Below are positions 2,612-50,678 of a DNA stretch of 64,000 nucleotides, one piece after another. Each line of letters starts with the position of its first letter. The first letter of the stretch is position 1. Below the pieces are notes generated by a model. The model saw only the letters and a program-made list of their open reading frames with translations. It was not told the DNA's origin and did not search any database. A program made the translations under genes and the position numbers. The stretch lies in the IMG/VR virus record IMGVR_UViG_3300031787_000001, positions 124,001 to 188,000 of that record; one strand, written 5' to 3'.

Positions 2612-3790
2612 TTATATTATTTTTTTGAAATTATCTAATTCAATTTTATTTATCATATCACCCACTTCTTTACCCGGTTTTAAATTCATTTTTTTCATAA
2701 CATCATCTCCACTAACGGTTAAATTAAAATTAACAAAGGCATTTAATAACTTTTTATCAATACCCTCTAAATTACCAAAAGTCATTATTTGATCGTCAGA
2801 TAAATTTGTGTTTTTTTGTATTCTTTTTAATTGAATTACATTATCTAATGACATATTTTTTAAATTAATTAAGAAAGTAATGTCCTTTATCTCATCAACA
2901 CTATATTTTAGATTATTCAATTTTTTTCCGATTGTAGATAGATCATTGTTTTTTAATAATCTTGATATAACTAAAATCGGATCTTTAATTTCTATAAAAT
3001 CTTTTGACACAGATAAACCTCTGAATATTGAATCAAATAAATTATACTTATCAATCAATTGTAAAAAATGTATTGTTGATTTAGATGATATAATTCCCTT
3101 TATAAATTCATCTCTAATCCTTTCTCCCGATATACCATCTATACTTGAATTTCTCTGTAATGATTGATCAACATTATTATCTAAATCTGAACCGAACCTA
3201 CCAGCAAATCTAATTGCTCTAAGTATTCTTAATCTATCTTCATTAAATCTATCGTCAGGGTTACCAACAGTTCTAACAATATCGTTTTTTAAATCCTCAA
3301 CACCGCCAACTAAATCAACAACTTCACCTGTGTCAATATCATAATAAAGAGCATTTATTGTGAAATCCCTTCTTTTCGCATCTGTTTCAATATCTGTAAA
3401 TTCAACTTTATCTGGTCTTCTTTTATCTGACTCTGAATAAGATTCAGATCTAAATGTTGCTATTTCATATTCATCGTTATCTGTAAAAACATTTATAACA
3501 CCGAACGCCTTTCCCGTCGGTAATGTTTTGTAACCTGAATTATTTAATATTGTTTCAACCTCATCGGGTGTTGCATCCGTGGTCAAATCATAATCTTTTG
3601 GTGTTTTACCCAATACCGCATCTCTAACCGCACCACCAACAACAAATAATTTATAGTTATTTTTTTTGAAAATATCTTTAATTTTAATAATGTCTTCAGG
3701 TATTGATATATTGAATTTTATTCTTTCTTCAACCAATAAATCTGAATACATTATTTTATTTAATTGTGATTCAGTTATAACAATTTTCAT
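2612..3790 (-). CDS. cca: Class II tRNA nucleotidyltransferase (CCA-adding enzyme)
   Basis: VGGAVRD, DYD, RRDFTINAL, EDRLRILRAIRF (EDxxR). Confidence 0.9.
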   Translation of the reverse strand: MKIVITESQLNKIMYSDLLVEERIKFNISIPEDIIKIKDIFKKNNYKLFVVGGAVRDAVLGKTPKDYDLTTDATPDEVETILNNSGYKTLPTGKAFGVINVFTDNDEYEIATFRSESYSESDKRRPDKVEFTDIETDAKRRDFTINALYYDIDTGEVVDLVGGVEDLKNDIVRTVGNPDDRFNEDRLRILRAIRFAGRFGSDLDNNVDQSLQRNSSIDGISGERIRDEFIKGIISSKSTIHFLQLIDKYNLFDSIFRGLSVSKDFIEIKDPILVISRLLKNNDLSTIGKKLNNLKYSVDEIKDITFLINLKNMSLDNVIQLKRIQKNTNLSDDQIMTFGNLEGIDKKLLNAFVNFNLTVSGDDVMKKMNLKPGKEVGDMINKIELDNFKKII

Positions 3791-10912: not shown

Positions 10913-11854
10913 TTAGAAATTTATTTTAATAGGTTGACTTGATACAGTGTTTATTAATTGTGATGCCGCCTGTTGATCATTTGCAACACTTGCATTTTGT
11001 GTGTTGTAATATGTATCTCCGTTCTTGAAAACGTGTTTATTTTGTATATGTGCGTTTGCCCAATTAATTAAAAGATCATTATCTAAATTAATCATTTTTT
11101 GTCGATCCACCCCTTTATATTCTAAATAAACTAACGCCTTTACCCTATCGGTTATTTCAGGTGGTGCTTGTTGTGGTTGAGTTTGTTGAGTTTGAGTTTG
11201 TTGTGGTTTAGTTTGTTGTGTTTGTTGGCCACCCGAAGAGTTTTGACCTTTATATTTACCAAAAACCCATGCGGTGATTTTACCTCCTTCCCCATGGTAA
11301 CACCAATGTCCACACTTCCCTTTTTCATTAAAGATATCAGCGTGTCCCGATATTCCCGGCCATTTGGGGTTATTGGTTATGACAAAAATTCCTTTGTTAC
11401 CTTTTAGATATTTTTCAATATTTTCTGGAGTGTTATCTATTGAATCAATTGTAGGTTCCCCAAAAGTTCTTGTTAAATAAATTAAACTATTTTTAGCACC
11501 TGTTGTAATATCTTTACCTTTAGTGGGATACGTAATACCTTTAAACGTCCAATCTTTTTCACTTCTAAATGCACGACCACATTCTACACCCATTTTAATT
11601 AATGCCAAACATAATCTGGTTGCACATGCATTTTGGAATGTTTGTGGTGATTGTTTATATTGGTTTGGGAATATACCAGGAAAAATTTCTTCCTCATCCG
11701 CATTAGGAAAATTATTCCATAAGGCATTAAAATCCATACTTGTTACCACATTTTCAGGATTTACTGAAGCCTCGTTTAATACTTTCCTTGTTACTCCTTC
11801 GTATAGACCTCTTATTCTTGTTTTTTCTTCTTCTGTAATTATAAATTTTCCCAT
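10913..11854 (-). CDS. Leader + Tae4-family peptidoglycan amidase + Q/T-rich linker
   Basis: NACATRL (Cys) and GHADIFN (His); start reassigned to MGKFIITEEEK at 11854. Confidence 0.75.
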   Translation of the reverse strand: MGKFIITEEEKTRIRGLYEGVTRKVLNEASVNPENVVTSMDFNALWNNFPNADEEEIFPGIFPNQYKQSPQTFQNACATRLCLALIKMGVECGRAFRSEKDWTFKGITYPTKGKDITTGAKNSLIYLTRTFGEPTIDSIDNTPENIEKYLKGNKGIFVITNNPKWPGISGHADIFNEKGKCGHWCYHGEGGKITAWVFGKYKGQNSSGGQQTQQTKPQQTQTQQTQPQQAPPEITDRVKALVYLEYKGVDRQKMINLDNDLLINWANAHIQNKHVFKNGDTYYNTQNASVANDQQAASQLINTVSSQPIKINF

Positions 11855-11867
11855 ATTGAATTTTTTT

Positions 11868-12260
11868 TTAGGTTGGATAATTGGTTCTAATTTCACTAAA
11901 ATTATACAAAACCAATTTACCGTTTTCACATTTCCATCTACACAATTGATATTTCATTGATGCAGGAAGTAACCTTGCATTATATTTTCCTTCACTGTTA
12001 ACATAAACATCTGTTTTATATAACGTCACATCTTTACCATTATATTTTCCCGACCAACTATCAGGAACATTACGACCTCCTTTTAAAGGTGAGTAATGTC
12101 CTTTTTCAAATTGAAATCCTTTTAAACAAGATATATCATCTTTTTTAGGTACGATAGTAGGTTTTATAGTTGATGTGTCTCTACCCATATTTTGTTCACT
12201 GATCACATTTTTAATCAAGTCGATCAATTCACTTTCTGTTAATCTAACAACTTTCTTCAT
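11868..12260 (-). CDS. Hypothetical protein, MKKVVRLTESEL leader
   Basis: ORF track. Confidence 0.8.
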   Translation of the reverse strand: MKKVVRLTESELIDLIKNVISEQNMGRDTSTIKPTIVPKKDDISCLKGFQFEKGHYSPLKGGRNVPDSWSGKYNGKDVTLYKTDVYVNSEGKYNARLLPASMKYQLCRWKCENGKLVLYNFSEIRTNYPT

Positions 12261-14067: not shown

Positions 14068-15117
14068 TTATATGTAATTATTTTCTCTCAACATAAAATG
14101 ACCTAATTCAAATGTTAAAATAGATTTAATATTTTTTTCTTCCCAGTATGGTATTCTTATTAATTGTATGTTGTTATCTTTACAATAATTTGTTTTAATT
14201 AAGTCTCTTTCTTGTAATGACTTAAATCCTTCTTCTCCACCAAAATACTCAATAGGTTCAAAATGTTGGATACCGTCATATTCTATACACACCTCAGTAC
14301 CATCATTTTTTATTACATGAGCATCAAATTTTAGTTTATCACAATATCTTTTACCACCATAACCAAAGCAACCATCGAAAGATTTTTGTTTATTTACTTT
14401 ATAACCTAATTCGTTTAATACACTTATCACCTGAGATTCGCCCTTACTTTCTTTTTTACCACATATAGGGCAACCTGTTTTTCCTTTTTTTAGGTTATGT
14501 ATGTTTATACCTTCTTGAGCAAAAACAAAAGGTGTTGTGTGTTTTGTACATATAACATCTTTAACAAATAAAGTTTTATTTTTTAAACCATCCGTCTTAT
14601 AAAAAAAATTTTCAGGTTTAAATGATAATCCTCTCTCCGCGGGAAAAGAATTAATCCAATCTCTCACATTTATTTTTACTGCAGATATAATTCTATCTTT
14701 ACCACATTTTCTACAACCGTTCCCCCTTATTTTTAAATCTTTTACATTGATGTTATTTGATATACCATGTTCCTCACCATTTTCATCTGTTTTATGACAT
14801 TTTATACCATCAATAAATCTTCTACCGTTTATTAATCTATATTTTACATTGGAAAAATCTAATTCAGGAAATTGTTTAATTAATTCTTGGGTTACCACAT
14901 CGTCATCTTTTTTTTTAGGGGAGATTCTTAACAAATATTTCGTAATATCACCCCATGTATTTGAATCGTAGTTTCTATAAATGTATGTTTTTATGCCTGA
15001 ATATTTAGGATCTTTTCTAAAATCATCCATAGACGAAAATTTAGAAACGTAATCTTTAACATCACTTAAAGTCCATATTTTTTTTTCAATTTCATATAAT
15101 ATTTCTAATAATTTCAT
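14068..15117 (-). CDS. Putative free-standing endonuclease (Zn-ribbon repeats + Vsr/DUF559-like PD-(D/E)xK domain)
   Basis: GCRKC, GCPICG, SKGE, KFD..IEYDGIQHF, IRIPYW. Confidence 0.75.
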   Translation of the reverse strand: MKLLEILYEIEKKIWTLSDVKDYVSKFSSMDDFRKDPKYSGIKTYIYRNYDSNTWGDITKYLLRISPKKKDDDVVTQELIKQFPELDFSNVKYRLINGRRFIDGIKCHKTDENGEEHGISNNINVKDLKIRGNGCRKCGKDRIISAVKINVRDWINSFPAERGLSFKPENFFYKTDGLKNKTLFVKDVICTKHTTPFVFAQEGINIHNLKKGKTGCPICGKKESKGESQVISVLNELGYKVNKQKSFDGCFGYGGKRYCDKLKFDAHVIKNDGTEVCIEYDGIQHFEPIEYFGGEEGFKSLQERDLIKTNYCKDNNIQLIRIPYWEEKNIKSILTFELGHFMLRENNYI

Positions 15118-15168
15118 ATTATCATAAATATTCTGAAAAATTTCCAGAAATTTTTTTTTTCAGTTTTA
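15112..15168. repeat. 57-bp direct repeat, copy 1
   Basis: Identical to 16603-16658 except for T-run length. Confidence 0.9.
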
Positions 15169-16608
15169 TCGATTAAAGTCCAATTTTAGGATTTTTAAGA
15201 ATTGATCAAGTTTATCATTAATGTTTTTTGTACCTATTTTTTCTAATTTTTGGTTTAAGTTATTTATTTTGGTATAGAGTGTTGGATTTGATAATCTTGC
15301 AAGACCTGATTTAAATTCTATAGAAGAGGTTATTTGACTTGGATTATGTTTATAGTTATTTATTTCTTTTTCATAATTTTTTATAATAATACTAACCACT
15401 GAGTTATTGTTTCTTTTTATAAAGTCTTTGATATTTTTAATGATTTCATTATTTTCTATTGGTTTTGTTACTATACCATATATAACATCCATTTTAGATA
15501 ATTCTGTTTCCATTAATTTTTGTATGTTATCATACATTGGGTCAATGATATCTTTAGGTAATTTTTTAAACACATTTATTCCGAATGTACTGATTAAGAT
15601 TGAAGTTAAAAAATCGGGGTCATATACCGATAAGAATTTTTTTAATACATCGTATCTTTTATTTATTACTGATCCCCTTATTATGAATTTAACTTCATCT
15701 AAATTATTTGAATTTGTCTTTATTAATTCTATTATTTCATCAGATGGTTTATTGAATATATTTTTATCTGATCTAATATTTTCTTTATTTGTTATTTTAC
15801 TATATTCTATCATCCATTCTCTAATAAAGTTTTTAAAGTCATTATTAAATTCACCATAAAAATGATAAGCATTTCCAAATTCACAAACACTTGATTCTAA
15901 AAATCTACTTATTGGGTCTTTTATGTTCCAGTCTCCCCTTTTTATAAGATAAAAGACTAATAGTCCATTTTGGACAGTATTAATTATTACTCGACCAGAA
16001 CCTTCACCGACATCACCAAATCCGGCTGATGGTATTCCCGTTTGTAATATATTGGTATATTGTGTTAAGTTTTCACAAGATGTTATTTTCGGTTTTGATG
16101 ACATTTCGGCAATATCATGTGAGTGTCTTGAAATTACAACATATAATTTATCCTCACCTTTATATTCTTTAGTTAGTGCACCTAAAAAATCAGTATAATT
16201 TTTTAAAAGTGTATTGTCATTATCATTTAATACTTTGGTTATTTTTATTTCTTGTCCGTTTCTTTTATTTTTTGCGGTATTTTTATTAAAATCAACAATT
16301 GAGTAACCTAATTCTTCTAAACTTGATGATATTTGATTTTTTAATTTATCATCTAATTTAATGTCTATTTTTAATTTTGGTGTATGTTTGGTTGGTGTAA
16401 TTTGTTCACCAGTTTGTAGATCATAGTATAAACGATAGACATTTTTACCAAATATTTCTGTTAATTTTTCTTCATAATCTGATTTTAATTGTTTTGATCT
16501 AATTTGTTTAGATAGGTTAAGTGAAATATATTCATTAATTAAATTAAAATTAGATAACGTATTTTTAATAATATTTTTAAGTTGCGATTCTTTAATTAAA
16601 ATTTTCAT
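15166..16608 (-). CDS. Hypothetical protein, MKILIKESQL leader
   Basis: 480-aa ORF. Confidence 0.8.
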   Translation of the reverse strand: MKILIKESQLKNIIKNTLSNFNLINEYISLNLSKQIRSKQLKSDYEEKLTEIFGKNVYRLYYDLQTGEQITPTKHTPKLKIDIKLDDKLKNQISSSLEELGYSIVDFNKNTAKNKRNGQEIKITKVLNDNDNTLLKNYTDFLGALTKEYKGEDKLYVVISRHSHDIAEMSSKPKITSCENLTQYTNILQTGIPSAGFGDVGEGSGRVIINTVQNGLLVFYLIKRGDWNIKDPISRFLESSVCEFGNAYHFYGEFNNDFKNFIREWMIEYSKITNKENIRSDKNIFNKPSDEIIELIKTNSNNLDEVKFIIRGSVINKRYDVLKKFLSVYDPDFLTSILISTFGINVFKKLPKDIIDPMYDNIQKLMETELSKMDVIYGIVTKPIENNEIIKNIKDFIKRNNNSVVSIIIKNYEKEINNYKHNPSQITSSIEFKSGLARLSNPTLYTKINNLNQKLEKIGTKNINDKLDQFLKILKLDFNR

Positions 16609-16658
16609 ATTATCATAAATATTCTGAAAAATTTCCAGAAATTTTTTTTTCAGTTTTA
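16603..16658. repeat. 56-bp direct repeat, copy 2
   Basis: tttcatattatcataaatattctgaaaaatttccagaaa-Tn-cagtttta. Confidence 0.9.
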
Positions 16659-16714
16659 CCCCTATTGATCCGATTTTCAGATTTTTTCCGGAAAAATTTC
16701 TGTTACGGCATTGT

Positions 16715-16867
16715 CCCCCCTTTCTAACCCCCCCTAAAAACCCCTATTTAAGGGGGGATACGGGAGGGGGGTGGTATAGGGGGGAGGGGTATGTAGGGAG
16801 ATAGGGGGGTCGCCAGAGAAATTTTGAATCGGGACGGGGGTGGTCGGTCTGTATCTTGGATAGGGGG
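16715..16867. other. C-run then G-run tract (G-quadruplex-capable) at the block boundary
   Basis: C6, C7, C4 followed by ten G3-G6 runs. Confidence 0.8.
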
Positions 16868-16870
16868 TAT

Positions 16871-16899
16871 AAAAAAAAGGTATCGTTTCCGATACCTTT
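16871..16899 (-). terminator. Intrinsic terminator
   Basis: A-run + AGGTATCG..CGATACCT. Confidence 0.75.
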
Positions 16900-16927
16900 G
16901 TGAACTCATTAGAGTCAATTTAAGACC

Positions 16928-17449
16928 TTATCTTTCTACAATGTAGTGAACACCACCCAAAGTAATTTCCTCAATAGAACTCAACTTAAATGATTGTACC
17001 AACACTCTCCTTTCTTGTGGTTGTCTTGAACTCTCACTCACTTTAACAAGGTAACTTTCAAACAATGTCTTTTCAACTTCGTTACCCTCAAAAATGTAAC
17101 TTACATTCGGTTTGATTTCGTCAAATCTTTCAACTTGTAAGTAGTGGGAATTGTGTTTCTCATTGAACAAAACACACTTTGAAATATGAACACCCACCTT
17201 ATTTTCCTCACTCACAAAATTACCCTCTCCACCCTCTTTTTTATCATTGGTATTCACTCTCGTTTCGTACTCATTTCCAATAAGGTAGTTACATTTGTTC
17301 ACTTTGAACACCTTATCATAATAAGGGTTATTTGTTTTGTTCATACGAACTTTTGTTTTGGAAACGATATTAACAAAGGTTGATTTATCAACATTCATTA
17401 AGATTTCCAATAATTCAGTTTGTCCGATTGTTTTTGTTTCTTTGTTCAT
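16928..17449 (-). CDS. Early hypothetical protein, paralog of 23462..23989; no Ala
   Basis: Shared IVSKTKVRMNK, SESSRQPQE; promoter at 17473-17504. Confidence 0.85.
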   Translation of the reverse strand: MNKETKTIGQTELLEILMNVDKSTFVNIVSKTKVRMNKTNNPYYDKVFKVNKCNYLIGNEYETRVNTNDKKEGGEGNFVSEENKVGVHISKCVLFNEKHNSHYLQVERFDEIKPNVSYIFEGNEVEKTLFESYLVKVSESSRQPQERRVLVQSFKLSSIEEITLGGVHYIVER

Positions 17450-17676
17450 AGTTTTAATTTTTAATTGTTTCACAAATATACACCCTCAAAATGTATATTT
17501 CCAAATTTTTTTTTCCCTTTAACAAAACTTTAACATTTCGGGGGTGAAGGTTCGGGGTGACTTTTTTCGTGGCGAGAACCTACAAAGATACAAAATTATT
17601 TGTTAATAAAAAGTTAAAGTTTTCGTTAACAAAATTTTAAGAAAAAAAATTTGGAGGTGAACCCGTGAAGGTTTGG

Positions 17677-17762: not shown

Positions 17763-17888
17763 AGTTTTCCGGGTGATCCGGGGTTTACCCGTAAAATTCT
17801 TTAACATAACATTAACATTCGGGTTGATTGTTTTGGGGTGTATAAGGTGTATATTTGTATATCGTTCACAAGTTAAAACTCTACTACT

Positions 17889-19320: not shown

Positions 19321-19659
19321 ATGACACACGAACAACTACACAACTTCGTATCGGAAAAAGGTGAAAGGGAATTTAACCCACAAGAAACCTTACAAGTATT
19401 AACCCACAACAGAACAACATATTGGTCTTGGGGTGTATCTAAACTCCTTAATATGTTTAATAAGGGGTTATGTTTGAAAGTATCAGGACATCACCACAAA
19501 GGTTGGGTAATCATCACACTCGGTTTTACAGACACTTACTCGGTGTTTTATGTATCAAACAATGGTAAAGTCAAAGATGAACAACACTTGGTCTATTTTG
19601 ACGAACTCACCGAAAGGATAGATGATAAAATCGAACGAATACCGATTTACAAACACTAA
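19321..19659 (+). CDS. Early hypothetical protein; no Ala
   Basis: ORF track. Confidence 0.8.
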   Translation: MTHEQLHNFVSEKGEREFNPQETLQVLTHNRTTYWSWGVSKLLNMFNKGLCLKVSGHHHKGWVIITLGFTDTYSVFYVSNNGKVKDEQHLVYFDELTERIDDKIERIPIYKH

Positions 19660-19751
19660 TCACGAAATCGTAATACAGAAACCCTCGACAAAAGTCGGGG
19701 GTTTTTTGTTTTTCCACAGAACTCCGTGTTCACCAGATTCGCTGGTGGTGA

Positions 19752-34870: not shown

Positions 34871-35614
34871 ATGAATAAGTTTCATGGAAAAAAAGTAGGA
34901 GAAATCTTTGAGACAAAAGATTATTCAATTTTCAAATTCAGAGAGGACAATCGTCCAATCATTCCAAACCATGTTAAGAAGTTAGCGAAGAGAATGTCTG
35001 AACGTGGTTGGTTACCAACATCAGTTGTCACTATTAATGGAAGTGGTGATATTATTGATGGACAAAATCGTGTGACCGCAGCGATGAGTGTTGGTTGTCC
35101 GATTCGTTACAAAGTAGTGAAAGGAGCAGGAAGTGATGAAATGACGGAAATGAATACACTACAAAAGAATTGGTCTCCGTTTGACCACTTACACAAGTTC
35201 GTTGTGAAGGGTAATAAGAATTATGTTGTATTCAATAATTTCATTACCGACTATCCAATGTATAAGTACACCGAAGTCGCGATGTTTCTCAACAACTCAA
35301 TGTCAAGTGTGAAGAGAGATACTTTTGAAAGTGGTGAATATGTTGTAAAGAACGAGAAGAAAGCTCGTGAGTGGGCTAACAACATTCTTGAACTCAAACC
35401 TTACTTTGAGAAGTATTACAACAAGTCAATCTTTGTGAGGGCGATGGTGAAGATTATGTCAAATAAGAAAGACTTTGTTTTTGAAGAGTTTTTACACAAA
35501 GTAAAGTTGAGACCAATGAAGTTAGTTCCGTGTGGAACGGTGGAACAATATGTGGAAATGATTGAGGGTATCTACAACTACATGAGAAAGGATAAAGTGA
35601 ATTTAAGGTTTTGA
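34871..35614 (+). CDS. ParB/Srx N-terminal-domain protein
   Basis: NR..HVKKL, IIDGQNRVTAA. Confidence 0.75.
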   Translation: MNKFHGKKVGEIFETKDYSIFKFREDNRPIIPNHVKKLAKRMSERGWLPTSVVTINGSGDIIDGQNRVTAAMSVGCPIRYKVVKGAGSDEMTEMNTLQKNWSPFDHLHKFVVKGNKNYVVFNNFITDYPMYKYTEVAMFLNNSMSSVKRDTFESGEYVVKNEKKAREWANNILELKPYFEKYYNKSIFVRAMVKIMSNKKDFVFEEFLHKVKLRPMKLVPCGTVEQYVEMIEGIYNYMRKDKVNLRF

Positions 35615-45109: not shown

Positions 45110-46027
45110 ATGAAAAAGATTAACAATGTATTATCATTATGTGACGGTATCTCAATGTTCCAATACGCATTGAAAAAATCAGGAATTGAGTACAAGAATT
45201 ATTTTTCAGGTGAGATCAGTGAAACTGCTATGAGTATAGCAATGAAGAATTTCCCGAAAACAAAACAACTTGGTGATATCCGTAACATCAAAGGAAAAAA
45301 TTTACCTGAGATCGATATTATGGTTGCGGGATTTCCTTGTCAACAATTCTCAAGAGCAGGTAATGAAGATGGATTAACAGATATTCACGGAAATGTTCTC
45401 GACACATACAAGAAGTATCGTGAAGCCGATAAAAAGGGATGGATTAGAGAAGGATCTCAATCACACATTTTTTGGGAAGTATATAGGATCTTCAAAGAAG
45501 TTAAACCGAAGTATTTCATTTTTGAGAATGTTAAAATGGATCCAAAGTGGATGTACATCATATCAACATCTTTCGGTGTTAGTCCCATCTTAATAGATTC
45601 AAAATTGGTTTCCGCTCAACATCGTGAGAGATACTATTGGACAAATATTCCTGGTGCTATAATTCCAAAAGATAAAGGAATTCATCTTTCAAGTATTATT
45701 CCTGATGCGATCGGTGGACACGGTGTTAGAAACATTGATACAGGTAAGAAAACTCCTGAAGGTAAAAAAGTTTGGCGTAAGAACGCTACAACAAGAAAAG
45801 ATGGTAAGGCCAACTGTTTAACAACAAGAAAGGGTAACTGTTCCAAAGTGGAATTAAAGGACGGAACCATTAGACAAATCACCATCGAGGAAGCTGAACA
45901 ACTTCAAAATCTCCCGAAGAACTATACCAAAGTTCCTGGTGTTGCTGAAGGTAAGAGGTGGCACGCCATCGGTAATGGGTTCACCGTCAATGTATTTGTT
46001 CACCTATTAAAAGGTCTTAAAAAATAA
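45110..46027 (+). CDS. DNA (cytosine-5)-methyltransferase
   Basis: GFPCQ (motif IV), FENV (VI), Q.RER (VIII), IGNG (X). Confidence 0.9.
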   Translation: MKKINNVLSLCDGISMFQYALKKSGIEYKNYFSGEISETAMSIAMKNFPKTKQLGDIRNIKGKNLPEIDIMVAGFPCQQFSRAGNEDGLTDIHGNVLDTYKKYREADKKGWIREGSQSHIFWEVYRIFKEVKPKYFIFENVKMDPKWMYIISTSFGVSPILIDSKLVSAQHRERYYWTNIPGAIIPKDKGIHLSSIIPDAIGGHGVRNIDTGKKTPEGKKVWRKNATTRKDGKANCLTTRKGNCSKVELKDGTIRQITIEEAEQLQNLPKNYTKVPGVAEGKRWHAIGNGFTVNVFVHLLKGLKK

Positions 46028-49034: not shown

Positions 49035-49483
49035 TTACGGGCCTCCCTTCGGTCGGCCCTTCATCCCCGAATATAGTGACCCATATGTATGACAAATATA
49101 TATGGGTTTTTTTGTGACCGTTCCCCCTGAAGTCCGACCATCGTGAAACGAGGGAGGACGATAATCTATTCCACATATACATATATAAAACGTATACTGA
49201 AGACGTATAAATGTATGACGTTTATAAATTTTTCAGAAAGTGGGTCGTGATTCGGACAAGGGACAATCCTACACTATCTCCCACAAAGTTACACTTTTCC
49301 CCACTTTTCCACTCTGTCATACATAGAACCAAAAAAATGTGGGTTACAGGTATCTGTAGAAGGGAAAAAATAGGTACGACAAAAAAGGTGACAAAATGTC
49401 TGGTTTTTATAGGTTATTTTAATAGAAATTTGTAATACACTCGGTCCCCCATAAAGTGGGTGACCTCGTTTACTGGTACCCAA

Positions 49484-49882
49484 TTAGTTATGTATATAAT
49501 ACCTAAACTTATACTCAACCTTCCCCAAGAGTCCCATGGGTAGAACATTAATGAACATATAGAACCTTACCTTATAGACATTCTCTTCCAGTAACTTCTT
49601 TACGATCTGACGAGCAACTCTGTGGAACTCATATGGACCACTTAGATAAGACTCCCCCTTTAATGTGACGACCACCTCATCTGTGTGAGGGAGTGAATAA
49701 GGGTCCGTCTTAACCGTTCCTTGTATATCTAATTTACCCAATGTTTCCATTAGACTCTTCTCACATTTCCTTTCAAACTCTTCTATCTTCTCTACATACT
49801 TTTCCTGTGTATGAACTTTCTTACTGTGTCCGAGTAGAGGAAATAGTATGGAGAGGTTCAGATCTACTTCTGGTCGTTCCAT
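49484..49882 (-). CDS. Hypothetical protein
   Basis: ORF track. Confidence 0.7.
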   Translation of the reverse strand: MERPEVDLNLSILFPLLGHSKKVHTQEKYVEKIEEFERKCEKSLMETLGKLDIQGTVKTDPYSLPHTDEVVVTLKGESYLSGPYEFHRVARQIVKKLLEENVYKVRFYMFINVLPMGLLGKVEYKFRYYIHN

Positions 49883-50678
49883 TGTTTTAATTCTTCAATT
49901 ATATTATTATTCATCTCTGTACAGAAATCTCGTTCAAGTATATTCTTTAGTGCTTGTTCTGCATCAACACCTGTTTCACTTGTGGCCATTTCAATACACT
50001 CATCATCTGTTTTATTATGCCAAAATGTTAAGTGTTTCAATAACTGATTTCCGTCTATTTTATTCATAAACTTCTTCGATTTTAAGTATTTTACAATCTT
50101 TCACATTTACACATTCCAACATTTCTTTTTTCCATTCTTTAAGTTTTTCTAAGTTGGATGTTTCTCTATAACCCATTTTATAGTAGTCATCAAATTCATT
50201 TTTAAATAATCCAATGTATTTTTGTTCGTTATTCATAAACTTCTATTGTTTTATCTTTGTATGTTACTGTAATTAGTTGAGTTGGGATGTTTATACCTTG
50301 ATTTGACTGAATGCCTTCGTATTGTTCTTGAATATACTTTTCCCATTCATGTCCATAAATTATCCTATCATTCTCAATATCATTTATACAATTAGTTTTT
50401 TCCAATTGCCATTCTTTTTCTTCCAAACTCAACTCTCTTTCTTCAATCTTTAATCTCCACTTTTCAGAGAACTCTGTGTCGGTTTTGATTTTGTTGATGA
50501 ATTCTTCTTTGGTTAAATGACGAGTTGGATGTGGAGATACCATAGAACGACCATTCAACATACACCAACCTTTACCTATATTTTGATAAAGAAGATTTGT
50601 ACGATGGTCGTGTATTGTTGCTAATGGATAGTTTTGGTAATTCTCATAAGCCTCATCAATGATCTGTTCTTTATTCAT
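49864..50678 (-). CDS. Hypothetical ORFs 49864-50067, ~50060-50236, 50229-50678
   Basis: Junctions share AGAAGTTTATGAATAA. Confidence 0.65.

What the first reader, a model, noticed from the sequence alone, without database searches (positions are those of the whole stretch)
16715..16867. C-run/G-run tract at the late/early boundary: candidate genome end, pac site or origin
Seen: C6, C7, C4 then ten G-runs in ~150 bp of a ~30% GC genome. Promoter class and oligonucleotide composition change abruptly here, and a TGGC arm (16812-16822) lies inside. The tract could form a G-quadruplex or fold back. Inference: the physical terminus, with the right-hand side entering the cell first.
Basis: partly seen in the sequence, partly recalled or inferred. 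Interest (0 to 1): 0.6.

Follow-up and report, generated by a model that had tools for sequence, protein, structure and literature searches.

The report
Conserved G-run element heading early genes
The C-run/G-run tract is real and is part of a single-copy DNA element, conserved in over 100 related uncultured freshwater jumbo phages, that always sits at the head of the early-gene block; it looks most like a transcription-primed (R-loop/G-quadruplex) replication origin, and a genome end is neither supported nor excluded.

Summary
Window 16715-16867 holds C6, C7, C4 and then ten G-runs. It is the densest G/C-run cluster and the only canonical quadruplex motif in the 286,785-bp, 30.5% GC phage genome.

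The tract is the right part of a larger element (about 16679-16867). On its left is a promoter-like motif (T6CCGGA5TTT-N10-ATTGT) that faces the tract. It is followed by C6, a fixed 30-31-nt spacer, the near-invariant block TAAGGGGGGATAC-GGGAGGGGGG, and a variable array with G-runs on one strand only.

The element occurs once per genome. It is conserved in 108 distinct variants from related AT-rich jumbo-phage contigs. It marks the left edge of the early block, where host (Bacteroidota-type) promoter matches jump from 0.06 to 0.93 per kb.

In 32 of 108 relatives, but not in this genome, DnaA-box-like sites follow the G array. Homing-endonuclease genes have copied the left motif as their upstream region.

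Best reading (about 0.4): a promoter firing into a G-rich non-template strand, acting as an R-loop/G4 origin in the manner of T4 oriF/oriG, ColE1 or mitochondrial CSB II.

The genome-end reading is not supported by contigs or by the T4-like terminase. It could not be tested with reads. A long terminal repeat that starts at the tract remains a live rival.

The parts
16609..16641 (-). Upstream region of the leftward 480-aa gene: TTTCTGGAAATTTTTCAG followed by TATTTATG (the non-early promoter word), ending 3 nt before the ATG at 16608
   Evidence: The same ~50 nt is duplicated in front of the HNH gene (15118-15165). TATTTAT is enriched 8.8-fold upstream of non-early genes.
16679..16714 (+). Rightward promoter-like motif: T6-CCGG-A5-TTT, 10 nt, ATTGT. 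It can be read as TTCCGG-N17-CATTGT and faces the tract.
   Evidence: Invariant or nearly so in 59 aligned variants, including positions not fixed by the search pattern. It occurs once in the genome. In relatives, duplicated copies cut off at or just after the C-run sit 80-116 nt upstream of rightward homing-endonuclease genes. Promoter activity is inferred, not shown.
16715..16720 (+). C6 run, the first conserved G:C homopolymer block
   Evidence: Present in 33 of 36 variants fished independently with the right-hand pattern, and replaced by G5 in 2.
16721..16744 (+). Variable part of the 30-31-nt spacer between C6 and G6. In this genome it holds C7, A5 and C4; only an A-run (AAAA) is conserved across relatives. 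The TATTTAA that completes the spacer belongs to the next part.
   Evidence: Alignment A2: the spacer length is constant and the C7 and C4 runs are not conserved.
16745..16771 (+). Near-invariant block TAT(A/T)TAA-GGGGGG-ATAC-GGGAGGGGGG
   Evidence: T84, G90-92, A93, T94, A95 and C96 are invariant, and A85-G89 are at least 90% conserved, in A2. None of these positions was part of the fishing pattern. Used as a pattern, this block finds about 48 further AT-rich large phage contigs.
16752..16867 (+). G-run array (ten runs of G3-G6). It contains direct repeats CGGGA(G/C)GGGGGTGGT (16761, 16830) and (G/T)ATAGGGGG (three copies).
   Evidence: In relatives the length and sequence vary, but G-runs always lie on this strand: a quadruplex motif is on the G strand in 62 of 99 variants and on the C strand in 0.
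16868..16899 (-). Intrinsic terminator (10-bp stem, T8) of the leftward early gene
   Evidence: sequence.
16928..17473 (-). 181-aa early gene. Its homologues are the most conserved neighbour of the element; it is inverted here.
   Evidence: Homologues occur in 39 variants, on the + strand as the first gene right of the element in 37. The AF2 model has pLDDT 90 but gives only weak Sm/WYL/YaeO-like matches, Z <= 6.7.
17475..17504 (-). Host-type promoter of the 181-aa gene
17828..17860 (+). First of 43 rightward host-type promoter matches; start of the early block that runs to about 49034
   Evidence: ORF map.
15166..16608 (-). 480-aa gene of unknown function, left neighbour of the element; not a conserved neighbour
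   Evidence: No Pfam or PHROG family. Only distant homologues, in other positions, in relatives.

Best explanation
The tract is the transcribed part of a single-copy cis-element that most likely serves as an origin of DNA replication of the transcription-primed (R-loop) kind.

Proposed steps, all inferred unless marked otherwise:
1. A special promoter-like motif at 16679-16714, found nowhere else in the genome in this form, fires rightward and starts near the C6 run.
2. The RNA polymerase then copies a template whose non-template strand is a dense array of G-runs. This is shown: it is the only quadruplex-prone sequence in the genome, and its strand bias is conserved.
3. G-rich RNA on a C-rich template, together with a displaced G-rich strand that can fold into a quadruplex, gives a persistent RNA-DNA hybrid and stalls or ends transcription.
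4. The hybrid RNA is trimmed to a primer. The phage encodes a T4 RNase H-type 5'-3' exonuclease. Leading-strand synthesis then starts towards the early genes.
5. The displaced strand is the loading platform for the phage DnaB-type helicase. In about 30% of related phages, host DnaA boxes just beyond the G array would assist this, as in pBR322.

The invariant words (T6CCGGA5TTT, ATTGT-C6, TAAGGGGGGATAC) at fixed spacing are read as protein contacts on duplex DNA, not as a hairpin.
For: - Uniqueness. There is one copy per genome (profile search; pattern searches). It is the only quadruplex motif in 287 kb.
- Deep conservation at nucleotide level. 14 invariant and 18 nearly invariant columns lie outside the fishing pattern in 59 sequences, while neighbouring proteins are only 25-59% identical. 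Fishing with the right half recovers the left half and vice versa.
- Direction. Copies of the left motif truncated at or just after the C-run sit 80-116 nt upstream of rightward HNH/EndoVII homing-endonuclease genes, in three distinct sequence variants. This is what a portable promoter would do.
- Strand asymmetry. The G array is conserved on the non-template strand of that direction (62 of 99 against 0; G 36% against C 19%).
- DnaA boxes. TGT(G/T)GATAA-type boxes lie within 400 nt to the right of the G6 block in 32 of 108 variants, in at least seven different sequence contexts. That is 42 boxes in 39.5 kb, against 2 variants on the left and a background of 0.14 per kb.
- Location. The element lies where transcription changes strand and class, as the T4 review notes for oriE, oriF and oriG (PMC3016281).
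- Phage replication genes. The phage has a DnaB-family helicase and a T4 RNase H-family exonuclease.
- RNA. In one metatranscriptome, exact contigs cover 16796-17038. They run across the leftward terminator, which fits a rightward transcript better than a leftward one. This is weak, because the contigs carry no strand and DNA carry-over is possible.
- Precedents. T4 oriF/oriG are a promoter plus an R-loop (PMC3016281). Mitochondrial CSB II forms a hybrid G-quadruplex that ends transcription and primes replication (PMC3488243 and PMC4176368).
Against: - No replication data of any kind exist for this phage, and there is no cultured host.
- The window's own element has no DnaA box within one mismatch, and 70% of relatives have none.
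- T4 R-loop origins use an A+T-rich unwinding element rather than a G array, and they are not conserved in sequence between relatives. The strong sequence conservation here fits a protein-recognised site such as a packaging signal at least as well.
- GC skew is uninformative. It follows gene orientation, and coding-strand GC3 skew shows no flip.
- The transcription start is inferred. No sigma factor or polymerase was matched to the motif.
- In this genome and some relatives, the genes just right of the element point leftward, so a rightward transcript would be antisense to them.
Confidence: 0.4

Rival explanations
1. Packaging signal or physical end. The early block (genome 141.8-173.0 kb, 11% of the genome) would be a long direct terminal repeat like those of T5, SPO1 or XacN1. 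The conserved words would be the terminase recognition and cutting site at its left boundary, so the early genes would enter the cell first. A weaker form of the same idea is a pac site for headful series.
For: - The element is single-copy and deeply conserved in sequence, with fixed spacing and an inverted C6/G6 pair. This is typical of a site read by a conserved protein such as a small terminase.
- It always lies at the upstream edge of the early block, with early transcription running away from it. This matches the layout of the leading end of T7, T5 and N4 (own knowledge).
- An early block of about a tenth of the genome is the size relation seen for the T5 and SPO1 terminal repeats (own knowledge).
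- Circular-looking assemblies are equally expected for a collapsed terminal repeat.
- Summed contig depth in run X19 is roughly twofold higher to the right of the tract. That table sums other strains and repeated promoter cassettes and is explicitly not a copy number.
- Many metagenome contigs break in or next to the element.
Against: - The large terminase is of the T4 gp17 type. Its hits are dominated by hosts of T4-like phages (Escherichia, Synechococcus, Klebsiella, Vibrio and others). The closest named hits are a Flavobacterium and a Microcystis phage at 28% identity. It lies 73 kb from the element.
- Contig breaks are scattered over about 300 nt rather than piled at one base, as expected from homopolymer and quadruplex sequencing trouble.
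- All eight large contigs examined pass through the element.
- DnaA boxes next to a packaging site have no obvious role.
- The right edge of the early block (49035-49500) shows nothing comparable.
Confidence: 0.2
2. Promoter-proximal regulatory leader or small RNA. The special promoter would make a short G-rich RNA, or would modify RNA polymerase at a pause caused by the -10-like TATATAA plus G-run about 30 nt downstream. This would be comparable to lambda PR'/Q or HK022 put. The purpose would be to control read-through of the terminator-rich early block or to act in trans.
For: - The arrangement is a promoter-like motif, a fixed spacer, a -10-like word and then a G-rich stretch.
- It sits at the head of a 31-kb block of about 40 promoter-terminator cassettes.
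- RNA contigs overlap the tract.
- Homing endonucleases use the left motif as their upstream region.
Against: - No covariation supports an RNA structure, and the C6 to G5 swaps argue for DNA-level reading.
- There is no Rfam match. Folding is no better than shuffled sequence (z -1.1 to -1.9 as RNA).
- In this genome, in G001 and in a whole sub-clade, the next genes point the other way, which is awkward for a processive antitermination leader.
- This reading does not explain the DnaA boxes.
Confidence: 0.2
3. Transcriptional insulator for leftward transcription. On the minus strand, the tract is a 118-nt C-rich, G-poor RNA directly after an intrinsic terminator. That is an ideal Rho loading site, followed by a second small terminator-like hairpin (16755-16741). 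It would stop early transcripts from entering the next gene block.
For:: terminator, then C-runs, then CCCCTTAAATAGGGG-T5. C far exceeds G on the minus strand (62 against 27).
Against: In most relatives the genes right of the element point rightward, so no leftward transcript arrives there. The conserved words and the promoter-like motif are not explained.
Confidence: 0.05
4. No function of its own: a slippage-prone low-complexity remnant, or merely a homing-endonuclease target.
For: G-run lengths differ between close relatives (G8 to G12). Homing endonuclease genes are inserted there.
Against: Invariant non-homopolymer words at fixed spacing persist across more than 100 variants whose flanking proteins have diverged to 25-59% identity.
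Confidence: 0.03

Closest known systems
Bacteriophage T4 origins oriF (uvsY) and oriG (gene 34)
   Same: Both are a minimal element of about 100 bp made of a phage-specific promoter plus a downstream region in which the transcript stays hybridised and primes leading-strand synthesis. Both lie where transcription switches strand (PMC3016281). The phage here has T4-like terminase, helicase and RNase H-family genes.
   Different: T4 uses an A+T-rich unwinding element that can be swapped for others, and its origins share no sequence motif, even within T4. Here the downstream part is a G-run array with invariant words, and the element is single-copy and conserved across a large clade.
ColE1/pBR322 plasmid origin
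   Same: A promoter-driven RNA forms a persistent hybrid helped by a G-run in the RNA pairing with a C-run in the template. In pBR322 a DnaA box downstream helps load DnaB on the displaced strand (own knowledge; ColE1 R-loop role cited in PMC5333043). DnaA-box-like sites follow the G array in 32 of 108 relatives.
   Different: There is no long folded preprimer RNA and no antisense RNA control. The window's own element lacks a DnaA box.
[quoted passage not shown]
   Same: G-runs on the non-template strand just downstream of a promoter. A hybrid RNA-DNA quadruplex ends transcription and leaves the primer (PMC3488243 and PMC4176368). The local sequence type (G6 A G6-8) resembles GGGAGGGGGGAGGGGG here.
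   Different: The systems are unrelated (organelle, single-subunit polymerase). The phage array is longer, with 4 to 10 runs.
Leading-end organisation of T5, SPO1 and T7 (early genes next to, or inside, the terminal repeat) and the T5 injection-stop signal
   Same: A block of host-takeover genes with strong host-type promoters starts at a special non-coding site. The T5 stop signal is reported to carry repeats, inverted repeats and DnaA boxes (own knowledge, not checked here).
   Different: No terminal repeat or end has been shown here, and the terminase is of the T4 type rather than the T5, SPO1 or T7 type.
Lambda PR'/qut and HK022 put antitermination leaders
   Same: A promoter followed at fixed distance by a -10-like word or RNA element, at the head of a long terminator-containing transcription unit.
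   Different: There is no Q- or N-like gene, no supported RNA structure, and the adjacent genes are often in the opposite orientation.

Membership tests
R-loop origin of the T4 oriF/oriG type | A promoter within the minimal origin, firing into the element | tested here: inconclusive
   The conserved motif TTCCGG-N17-(C/T)ATTGT faces the tract, and truncated duplicates precede rightward homing-endonuclease genes. No transcription start was mapped. RNA contigs overlap 16796-17038 but carry no strand.
R-loop origin of the T4 oriF/oriG type | Downstream A+T-rich unwinding element in which the R-loop persists | tested here: not met
   The downstream part is 58% GC and G-rich. A different route to a stable hybrid (G-rich RNA, quadruplex) is proposed instead.
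R-loop origin of the T4 oriF/oriG type | Supports autonomous replication during infection | not testable with these tools
   Uncultured phage; the host is unknown.
ColE1/pBR322-type origin | G-run in the RNA opposite a C-run in the template that stabilises the hybrid | tested here: met
   Ten G-runs lie on the non-template strand of the inferred transcript. The strand bias is conserved.
ColE1/pBR322-type origin | DnaA box downstream of the hybrid region | tested here: not met
   The window has no box within one mismatch in or next to the tract. Boxes are present in 32 of 108 relatives and are strongly one-sided.
CSB II-like quadruplex priming site | At least four G-tracts with short loops on the non-template strand, close to a promoter | tested here: met
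   A canonical motif lies at genome 140752-140784. Apart from a C-run motif in the same tract, it is the only one in the genome, and G4Hunter reaches 2.72. 62 of 99 relatives keep one.
CSB II-like quadruplex priming site | Transcription ends in the G-tract and the RNA primes DNA synthesis | not testable with these tools
   Needs RNA 3' end mapping and RNA-DNA junction mapping.
cos or pac site / physical genome end | Molecule ends map to the site (read-start pile-up, contigs ending at one position) | tested here: inconclusive
   Raw-read runs X21 and X22 gave 1 and 5 partial reads. Contig ends near the site are scattered. Eight large contigs cross it.
cos or pac site / physical genome end | Terminase of a type that makes fixed ends, usually encoded next to the site | tested here: not met
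   The large terminase matches Terminase_6N and is gp17-like, 73 kb away. This is a prediction from homology at 24-28% identity, not a measurement.
Fold-back hairpin / cruciform end | Arms kept complementary by compensatory change | tested here: not met
   Changes in C6 or G6 are not compensated (L266, L283, L291). L332 and L336 have G5 in place of C6. DNA folding energy is no better than shuffles (z +1.07).
Known RNA families (Rfam 15) | Covariance-model match at gathering score | tested here: not met
   Only sub-threshold chance hits in the window and in ten relatives.
'Moraphages' (aquatic Bacteroidota jumbo phages, PMC12619734) | Shared core genes such as a sigma factor, T4-like structural genes and lysine-tRNA ligase | tested here: inconclusive
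   A sigma factor is present. No class II lysyl-tRNA synthetase domain was found. No marker-gene phylogeny was done.

The most novel reading that the evidence does not exclude
A whole clade of uncultured freshwater jumbo phages, with hosts probably in Bacteroidota, starts replication from one conserved site. There a dedicated promoter transcribes into a G-run array, so that a hybrid RNA-DNA quadruplex or R-loop makes the primer. This would be the mitochondrial CSB II trick in a phage, with host DnaA recruited in some lineages. It would be the first sequence-defined, clade-wide origin in T4-like large phages and a natural case of quadruplex-dependent priming in a bacterial virus.
Probability: 0.35. 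Interest if true: 0.75.

Novelty: new variant of a known kind. Interest (0 to 1): 0.6.

Why it matters
Origins and packaging signals of large uncultured phages are essentially unknown. T4's own origins share no motif, so nothing can be predicted from sequence.

This element is a roughly 120-190-bp single-copy site with invariant words. It can be found by pattern in more than 100 related contigs and always marks where the early programme begins. It gives three things:
- a landmark for orienting and comparing these genomes;
- a testable candidate for quadruplex/R-loop-primed replication in a bacterial virus;
- a defined site for building replicating or packageable vectors once a host is found.

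If it instead proves to be the end of a 31-kb terminal repeat, it would show that T4-type terminases can make fixed ends. That would also be worth knowing.

Tried and rejected
- **Near-identical DNA in GenBank phages:** none found.
- **Pfam and PHROG on the neighbours:** no family for the 480-aa or 181-aa proteins.
- **Short repeat CGGGANGGGGGTGGT across IMG/VR:** the scan gave almost only chance hits in GC-rich phages, plus the same phage again.
- **Relatives via the 480-aa protein:** only identical copies and one non-syntenic 37% homologue.
- **Reads:** the two raw-read runs held no usable reads of this phage. The contig runs cannot show ends. The depth difference left and right of the tract in X19 is not interpretable, because it sums strains and repeated cassettes.
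- **Apparent contig ends at L213, L214 and L207:** for L213 and L214 the record coordinates show the element deep inside the contig, so the cuts are storage boundaries. L207 was not checked.
- **Hairpin or fold-back:** rejected.
- **Rfam:** nothing.
- **Structured RNA downstream of the G array in one sub-clade:** rejected. The conserved sequence there is the 3' end of a leftward 137-aa gene.
- **GC3 skew as an origin test:** uninformative.
- **T7-like RNA polymerase search:** no hit, but the control genomes were silent too, so this says nothing.
- **Fold search for the 181-aa neighbour:** only weak small-barrel matches (YaeO, Hfq, WYL; Z <= 6.7), below the level that means anything.
- **Coverage from contig names via the look-up of encoding contigs:** one place, with no coverage information.

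Full report
**What the window is.** The window is bases 124,001-188,000 of a single 286,785-bp contig with 30.5% GC. IMG/VR lists it as a virus record, and CheckV estimates 86% completeness. The contig ends overlap by about 126-134 nt with one mismatch, so the assembly closes on itself far from the tract. At least 16 freshwater or lake studies hold the stretch.

The genome has a T4 gp17-type large terminase (Terminase_6N) at genome 67 kb. The best named relatives are a Flavobacterium phage and a Microcystis phage at 28% identity. It also has one clear sigma-70-family factor and a second hit below the curated cut-off, a DnaB-family helicase and a T4 RNase H-family exonuclease. Intrinsic terminators and Bacteroidota-type promoters point to a host in that phylum; this is inference.

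More than 240 IMG/VR contigs encode a terminase related to this one; the best 80 kept are 83-100% identical. This is therefore one member of a large clade of uncultured freshwater jumbo phages. It may overlap the recently named 'moraphages' (PMC12619734), but I did not establish that. A sigma factor is present and a lysyl-tRNA synthetase is absent.

**The observation.** The runs are exactly as described: C6, C7, C4 and then ten G-runs between 16715 and 16867. The cluster is unique in the genome by three measures:
- run density;
- G4Hunter score, 2.72 over 105 nt, with nothing else reaching 2;
- canonical quadruplex motifs, of which the only ones in 287 kb are here.

The other GC-rich peaks in the genome are coding.

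**Anatomy and surroundings.** Matches to the Bacteroidota promoter TTG-N17-21-TAnnTTTG are concentrated on the + strand from 17828 to 47158, with 43 of 73 genome-wide matches there. This 31-kb block of small genes is built of repeated promoter-terminator cassettes. It contains a ParB-like protein and a DNA methyltransferase among many unknowns. I take it to be the early, host-polymerase-dependent block.

Outside the block, a different word, ATATTTATA, is enriched 8.8-fold upstream of genes, and none of the instances examined lies inside the block.

One early gene (181 aa, 17473 to 16928) points leftward. It has its own host-type promoter at 17504 and a strong terminator at 16899-16868. The tract begins one base after that terminator's T-run.

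To the left of the tract are about 105 nt of non-coding DNA, followed by the ATG (16608) of a leftward 480-aa gene of unknown function. So the tract lies at the edge of the early block, but not at the point of divergence. The left side is 'non-early' rather than demonstrably late.

**Conservation.** Identical copies of the locus occur in several metagenomes. A simple three-G-run pattern finds exactly one site in each of two related contigs of 234 and 269 kb, and those sites are homologous to the tract.

The left flank is conserved as well. The pattern TTCCGGAAAAA-N13-ATTGTCCCCC finds 18 IMG/VR loci and 88 metagenome loci. In every large contig checked it occurs once.

An alignment of 59 distinct sequences (A2) shows 14 invariant and 18 nearly invariant columns that were not fixed by the fishing pattern. 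These include:
- the T-run and TTT that flank CCGGAAAAA;
- CT after the C-run;
- an A-run in the spacer;
- TAAGGGGGGATAC at a constant 30-31 nt from C6;
- the following GG(G/C)AGGGGGG.

Fishing instead with the right-hand block recovers 36 further distinct AT-rich variants. Of these, 33 have the C-run at the right distance and about half have a recognisable left motif. Altogether there are 108 distinct variants. A profile of the core finds a single site in the window's genome, E = 6e-27, with nothing else significant. By contrast, neighbouring proteins are only 25-59% identical between the same contigs.

**Position in relatives.** Across the variants, host-type promoter matches on the + strand number 0.93 per kb in the 5 kb to the right of the element and 0.06 per kb to the left. 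Homologues of the window's early genes lie to the right, on the + strand. The most conserved neighbour is the 181-aa protein family. It is the first rightward gene after the element in 37 of 40 copies and is inverted in the window.

**What the parts look like.** The left motif can be read as TTCCGG-N17-(C/T)ATTGT, with a start near the C-run. A related word (TTTCTGGAAATTTTTCAG) precedes the two leftward genes next door, and the family occurs nowhere else in the genome.

In three distinct relatives, a copy of the left motif cut off at or just after the C-run sits 80-116 nt upstream of a rightward HNH/EndoVII homing-endonuclease gene. A complete element follows 1.7-2.4 kb downstream. This is the behaviour of a portable rightward promoter. 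It is my main, indirect, reason for the direction of transcription.

The C6/G6 pair is not a hairpin requirement. Single changes are never compensated. Two variants have G5 in place of C6. Folding energies are ordinary for the composition. The constant spacing and invariant non-homopolymer words point to recognition of duplex DNA by proteins.

The G array varies in length and sequence, but its G-runs always lie on the non-template strand of the inferred transcript.

**DnaA boxes.** In 32 of 108 variants, one or two TGT(G/T)GATAA-type DnaA boxes lie within 400 nt to the right of the G6 block, in at least seven different contexts; many are the perfect consensus TGTGGATAA. Only two variants have one on the left, and the background is 0.14 per kb. 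The window's own element has none.

**Ends.** The only raw-read runs offered contained essentially no reads of this phage, so no direct end mapping was possible.

Indirect evidence is against a fixed end at the tract. All eight large contigs cross it, at varying distances from their ends. Contig breaks near it are frequent but scattered over about 300 nt, as expected for homopolymers and quadruplex-prone DNA in short-read assembly. The terminase is T4-like.

None of this excludes a long terminal repeat that collapses in assembly. The early block is 11% of the genome, which is the proportion seen for the T5 and SPO1 repeats (own knowledge). I therefore keep this rival at 0.2.

**RNA.** In a small metatranscriptome, the only exact contigs on the 5.9-kb stretch are 16796-16949 plus 16920-17038, and 19545-19724. 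The first pair crosses the leftward terminator. A rightward transcript from the element explains that more simply than read-through. However, contigs carry no strand and DNA carry-over cannot be excluded.

**Interpretation.** The features are: a unique promoter-like motif; a G-rich non-template strand with the genome's only quadruplex motif; one-sided DnaA boxes in many relatives; a position at a strand and class switch of transcription; and a T4-like replication gene set.

Together these fit best a transcription-primed origin. The logic is that of T4 oriF/oriG (PMC3016281) and ColE1. The hybrid would be stabilised as at mitochondrial CSB II (PMC3488243, PMC4176368). Every step beyond the sequence features is inferred.

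The main weaknesses are threefold. There are no replication data at all. This genome lacks a DnaA box. Strong sequence conservation is just as typical of a packaging signal.

I give the origin 0.4, a packaging signal or terminal-repeat boundary 0.2, a promoter-proximal regulatory leader or small RNA 0.2, a Rho-type insulator 0.05, and no function 0.03. The rest is left for something not yet thought of.

**Novelty.** I found no description of this element. The literature searches returned only the general precedents and the moraphage survey, which does not discuss origins or ends. If it is an origin, it is a new variant of a known kind. If it is the boundary of a terminal repeat made by a T4-type terminase, it is also a new variant.

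Noticed in passing
window 14068-15165: A free-standing HNH homing-endonuclease gene (349 aa; phrog_559 and phrog_9084) sits directly behind the 480-aa gene. It carries a near-exact duplicate of that gene's ~50-nt upstream region (15118-15165 compared with 16609-16656).
   Followed up: partly
L224:1722-2699, L246:2637-3593, L293:1330-2319: In relatives, an HNH/EndoVII-type homing-endonuclease gene (phrog_3322) is inserted just left of the element, behind a duplicated and truncated copy of the element's left motif. The element is therefore an insertion hotspot for mobile endonuclease genes.
   Followed up: yes
window 17400-42000: The early block is built from dispersed 60-280-nt repeats (70-90% identical) that carry terminator plus host-type promoter. 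Dozens of copies flank small genes, giving a cassette architecture prone to rearrangement.
   Followed up: partly
window 16928-17473: The 181-aa early gene is inverted relative to 37 of 40 homologous copies in relatives, where it is the first rightward gene after the element. The AF2 model is confident (pLDDT 90) but has only weak small beta-barrel matches (YaeO/Rof, Hfq, WYL; Z <= 6.7).
   Followed up: partly
L228, L233, L236, L262, L274, L275, L295 (element region): Closely related variants differ only in the length of one G homopolymer (about G8 to G12) inside the conserved block. This may be slippage or assembly noise, and could mean the element's activity is variable.
   Followed up: no
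whole genome G000, outside 141.8-173.1 kb: The word ATATTTATA is enriched 8.8-fold upstream of non-early genes. In the instances examined it lies mostly 27-59 nt before start codons, and none is in the early block. It is reminiscent of the single-element T4 late promoter TATAAATA and probably belongs to a phage sigma factor.
   Followed up: partly
G000:C1:239783-239989 (-) and 50191-50376 (+): There are two sigma-70 region 2 matches: one clear (65 bits, 278-aa frame) and one below the curated cut-off (23 bits, 234-aa frame).
   Followed up: no
L231, L279, L260, L245, L283, L296, L278, L301 (+107 to +520 from the motif): One sub-clade has a conserved leftward 136-160-aa gene whose stop codon abuts the G array, so there the array is only about 45 nt long.
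   Followed up: partly
window 10913-11929 and 2612-3790: A Tae4-like amidase domain (type VI effector family, probably a lysin here) and a CCA-adding tRNA nucleotidyltransferase lie in the block to the left. No tRNA gene was found in the window.
   Followed up: no
window 34871-35614 and 45110-46027: A ParB-like protein and a DNA methyltransferase are encoded inside the early block.
   Followed up: no
G000 contig ends (1-134 and 286652-286785): The contig ends repeat each other over about 126-134 nt with one mismatch. IMG/VR therefore calls the record linear although the assembly is circular.
   Followed up: yes
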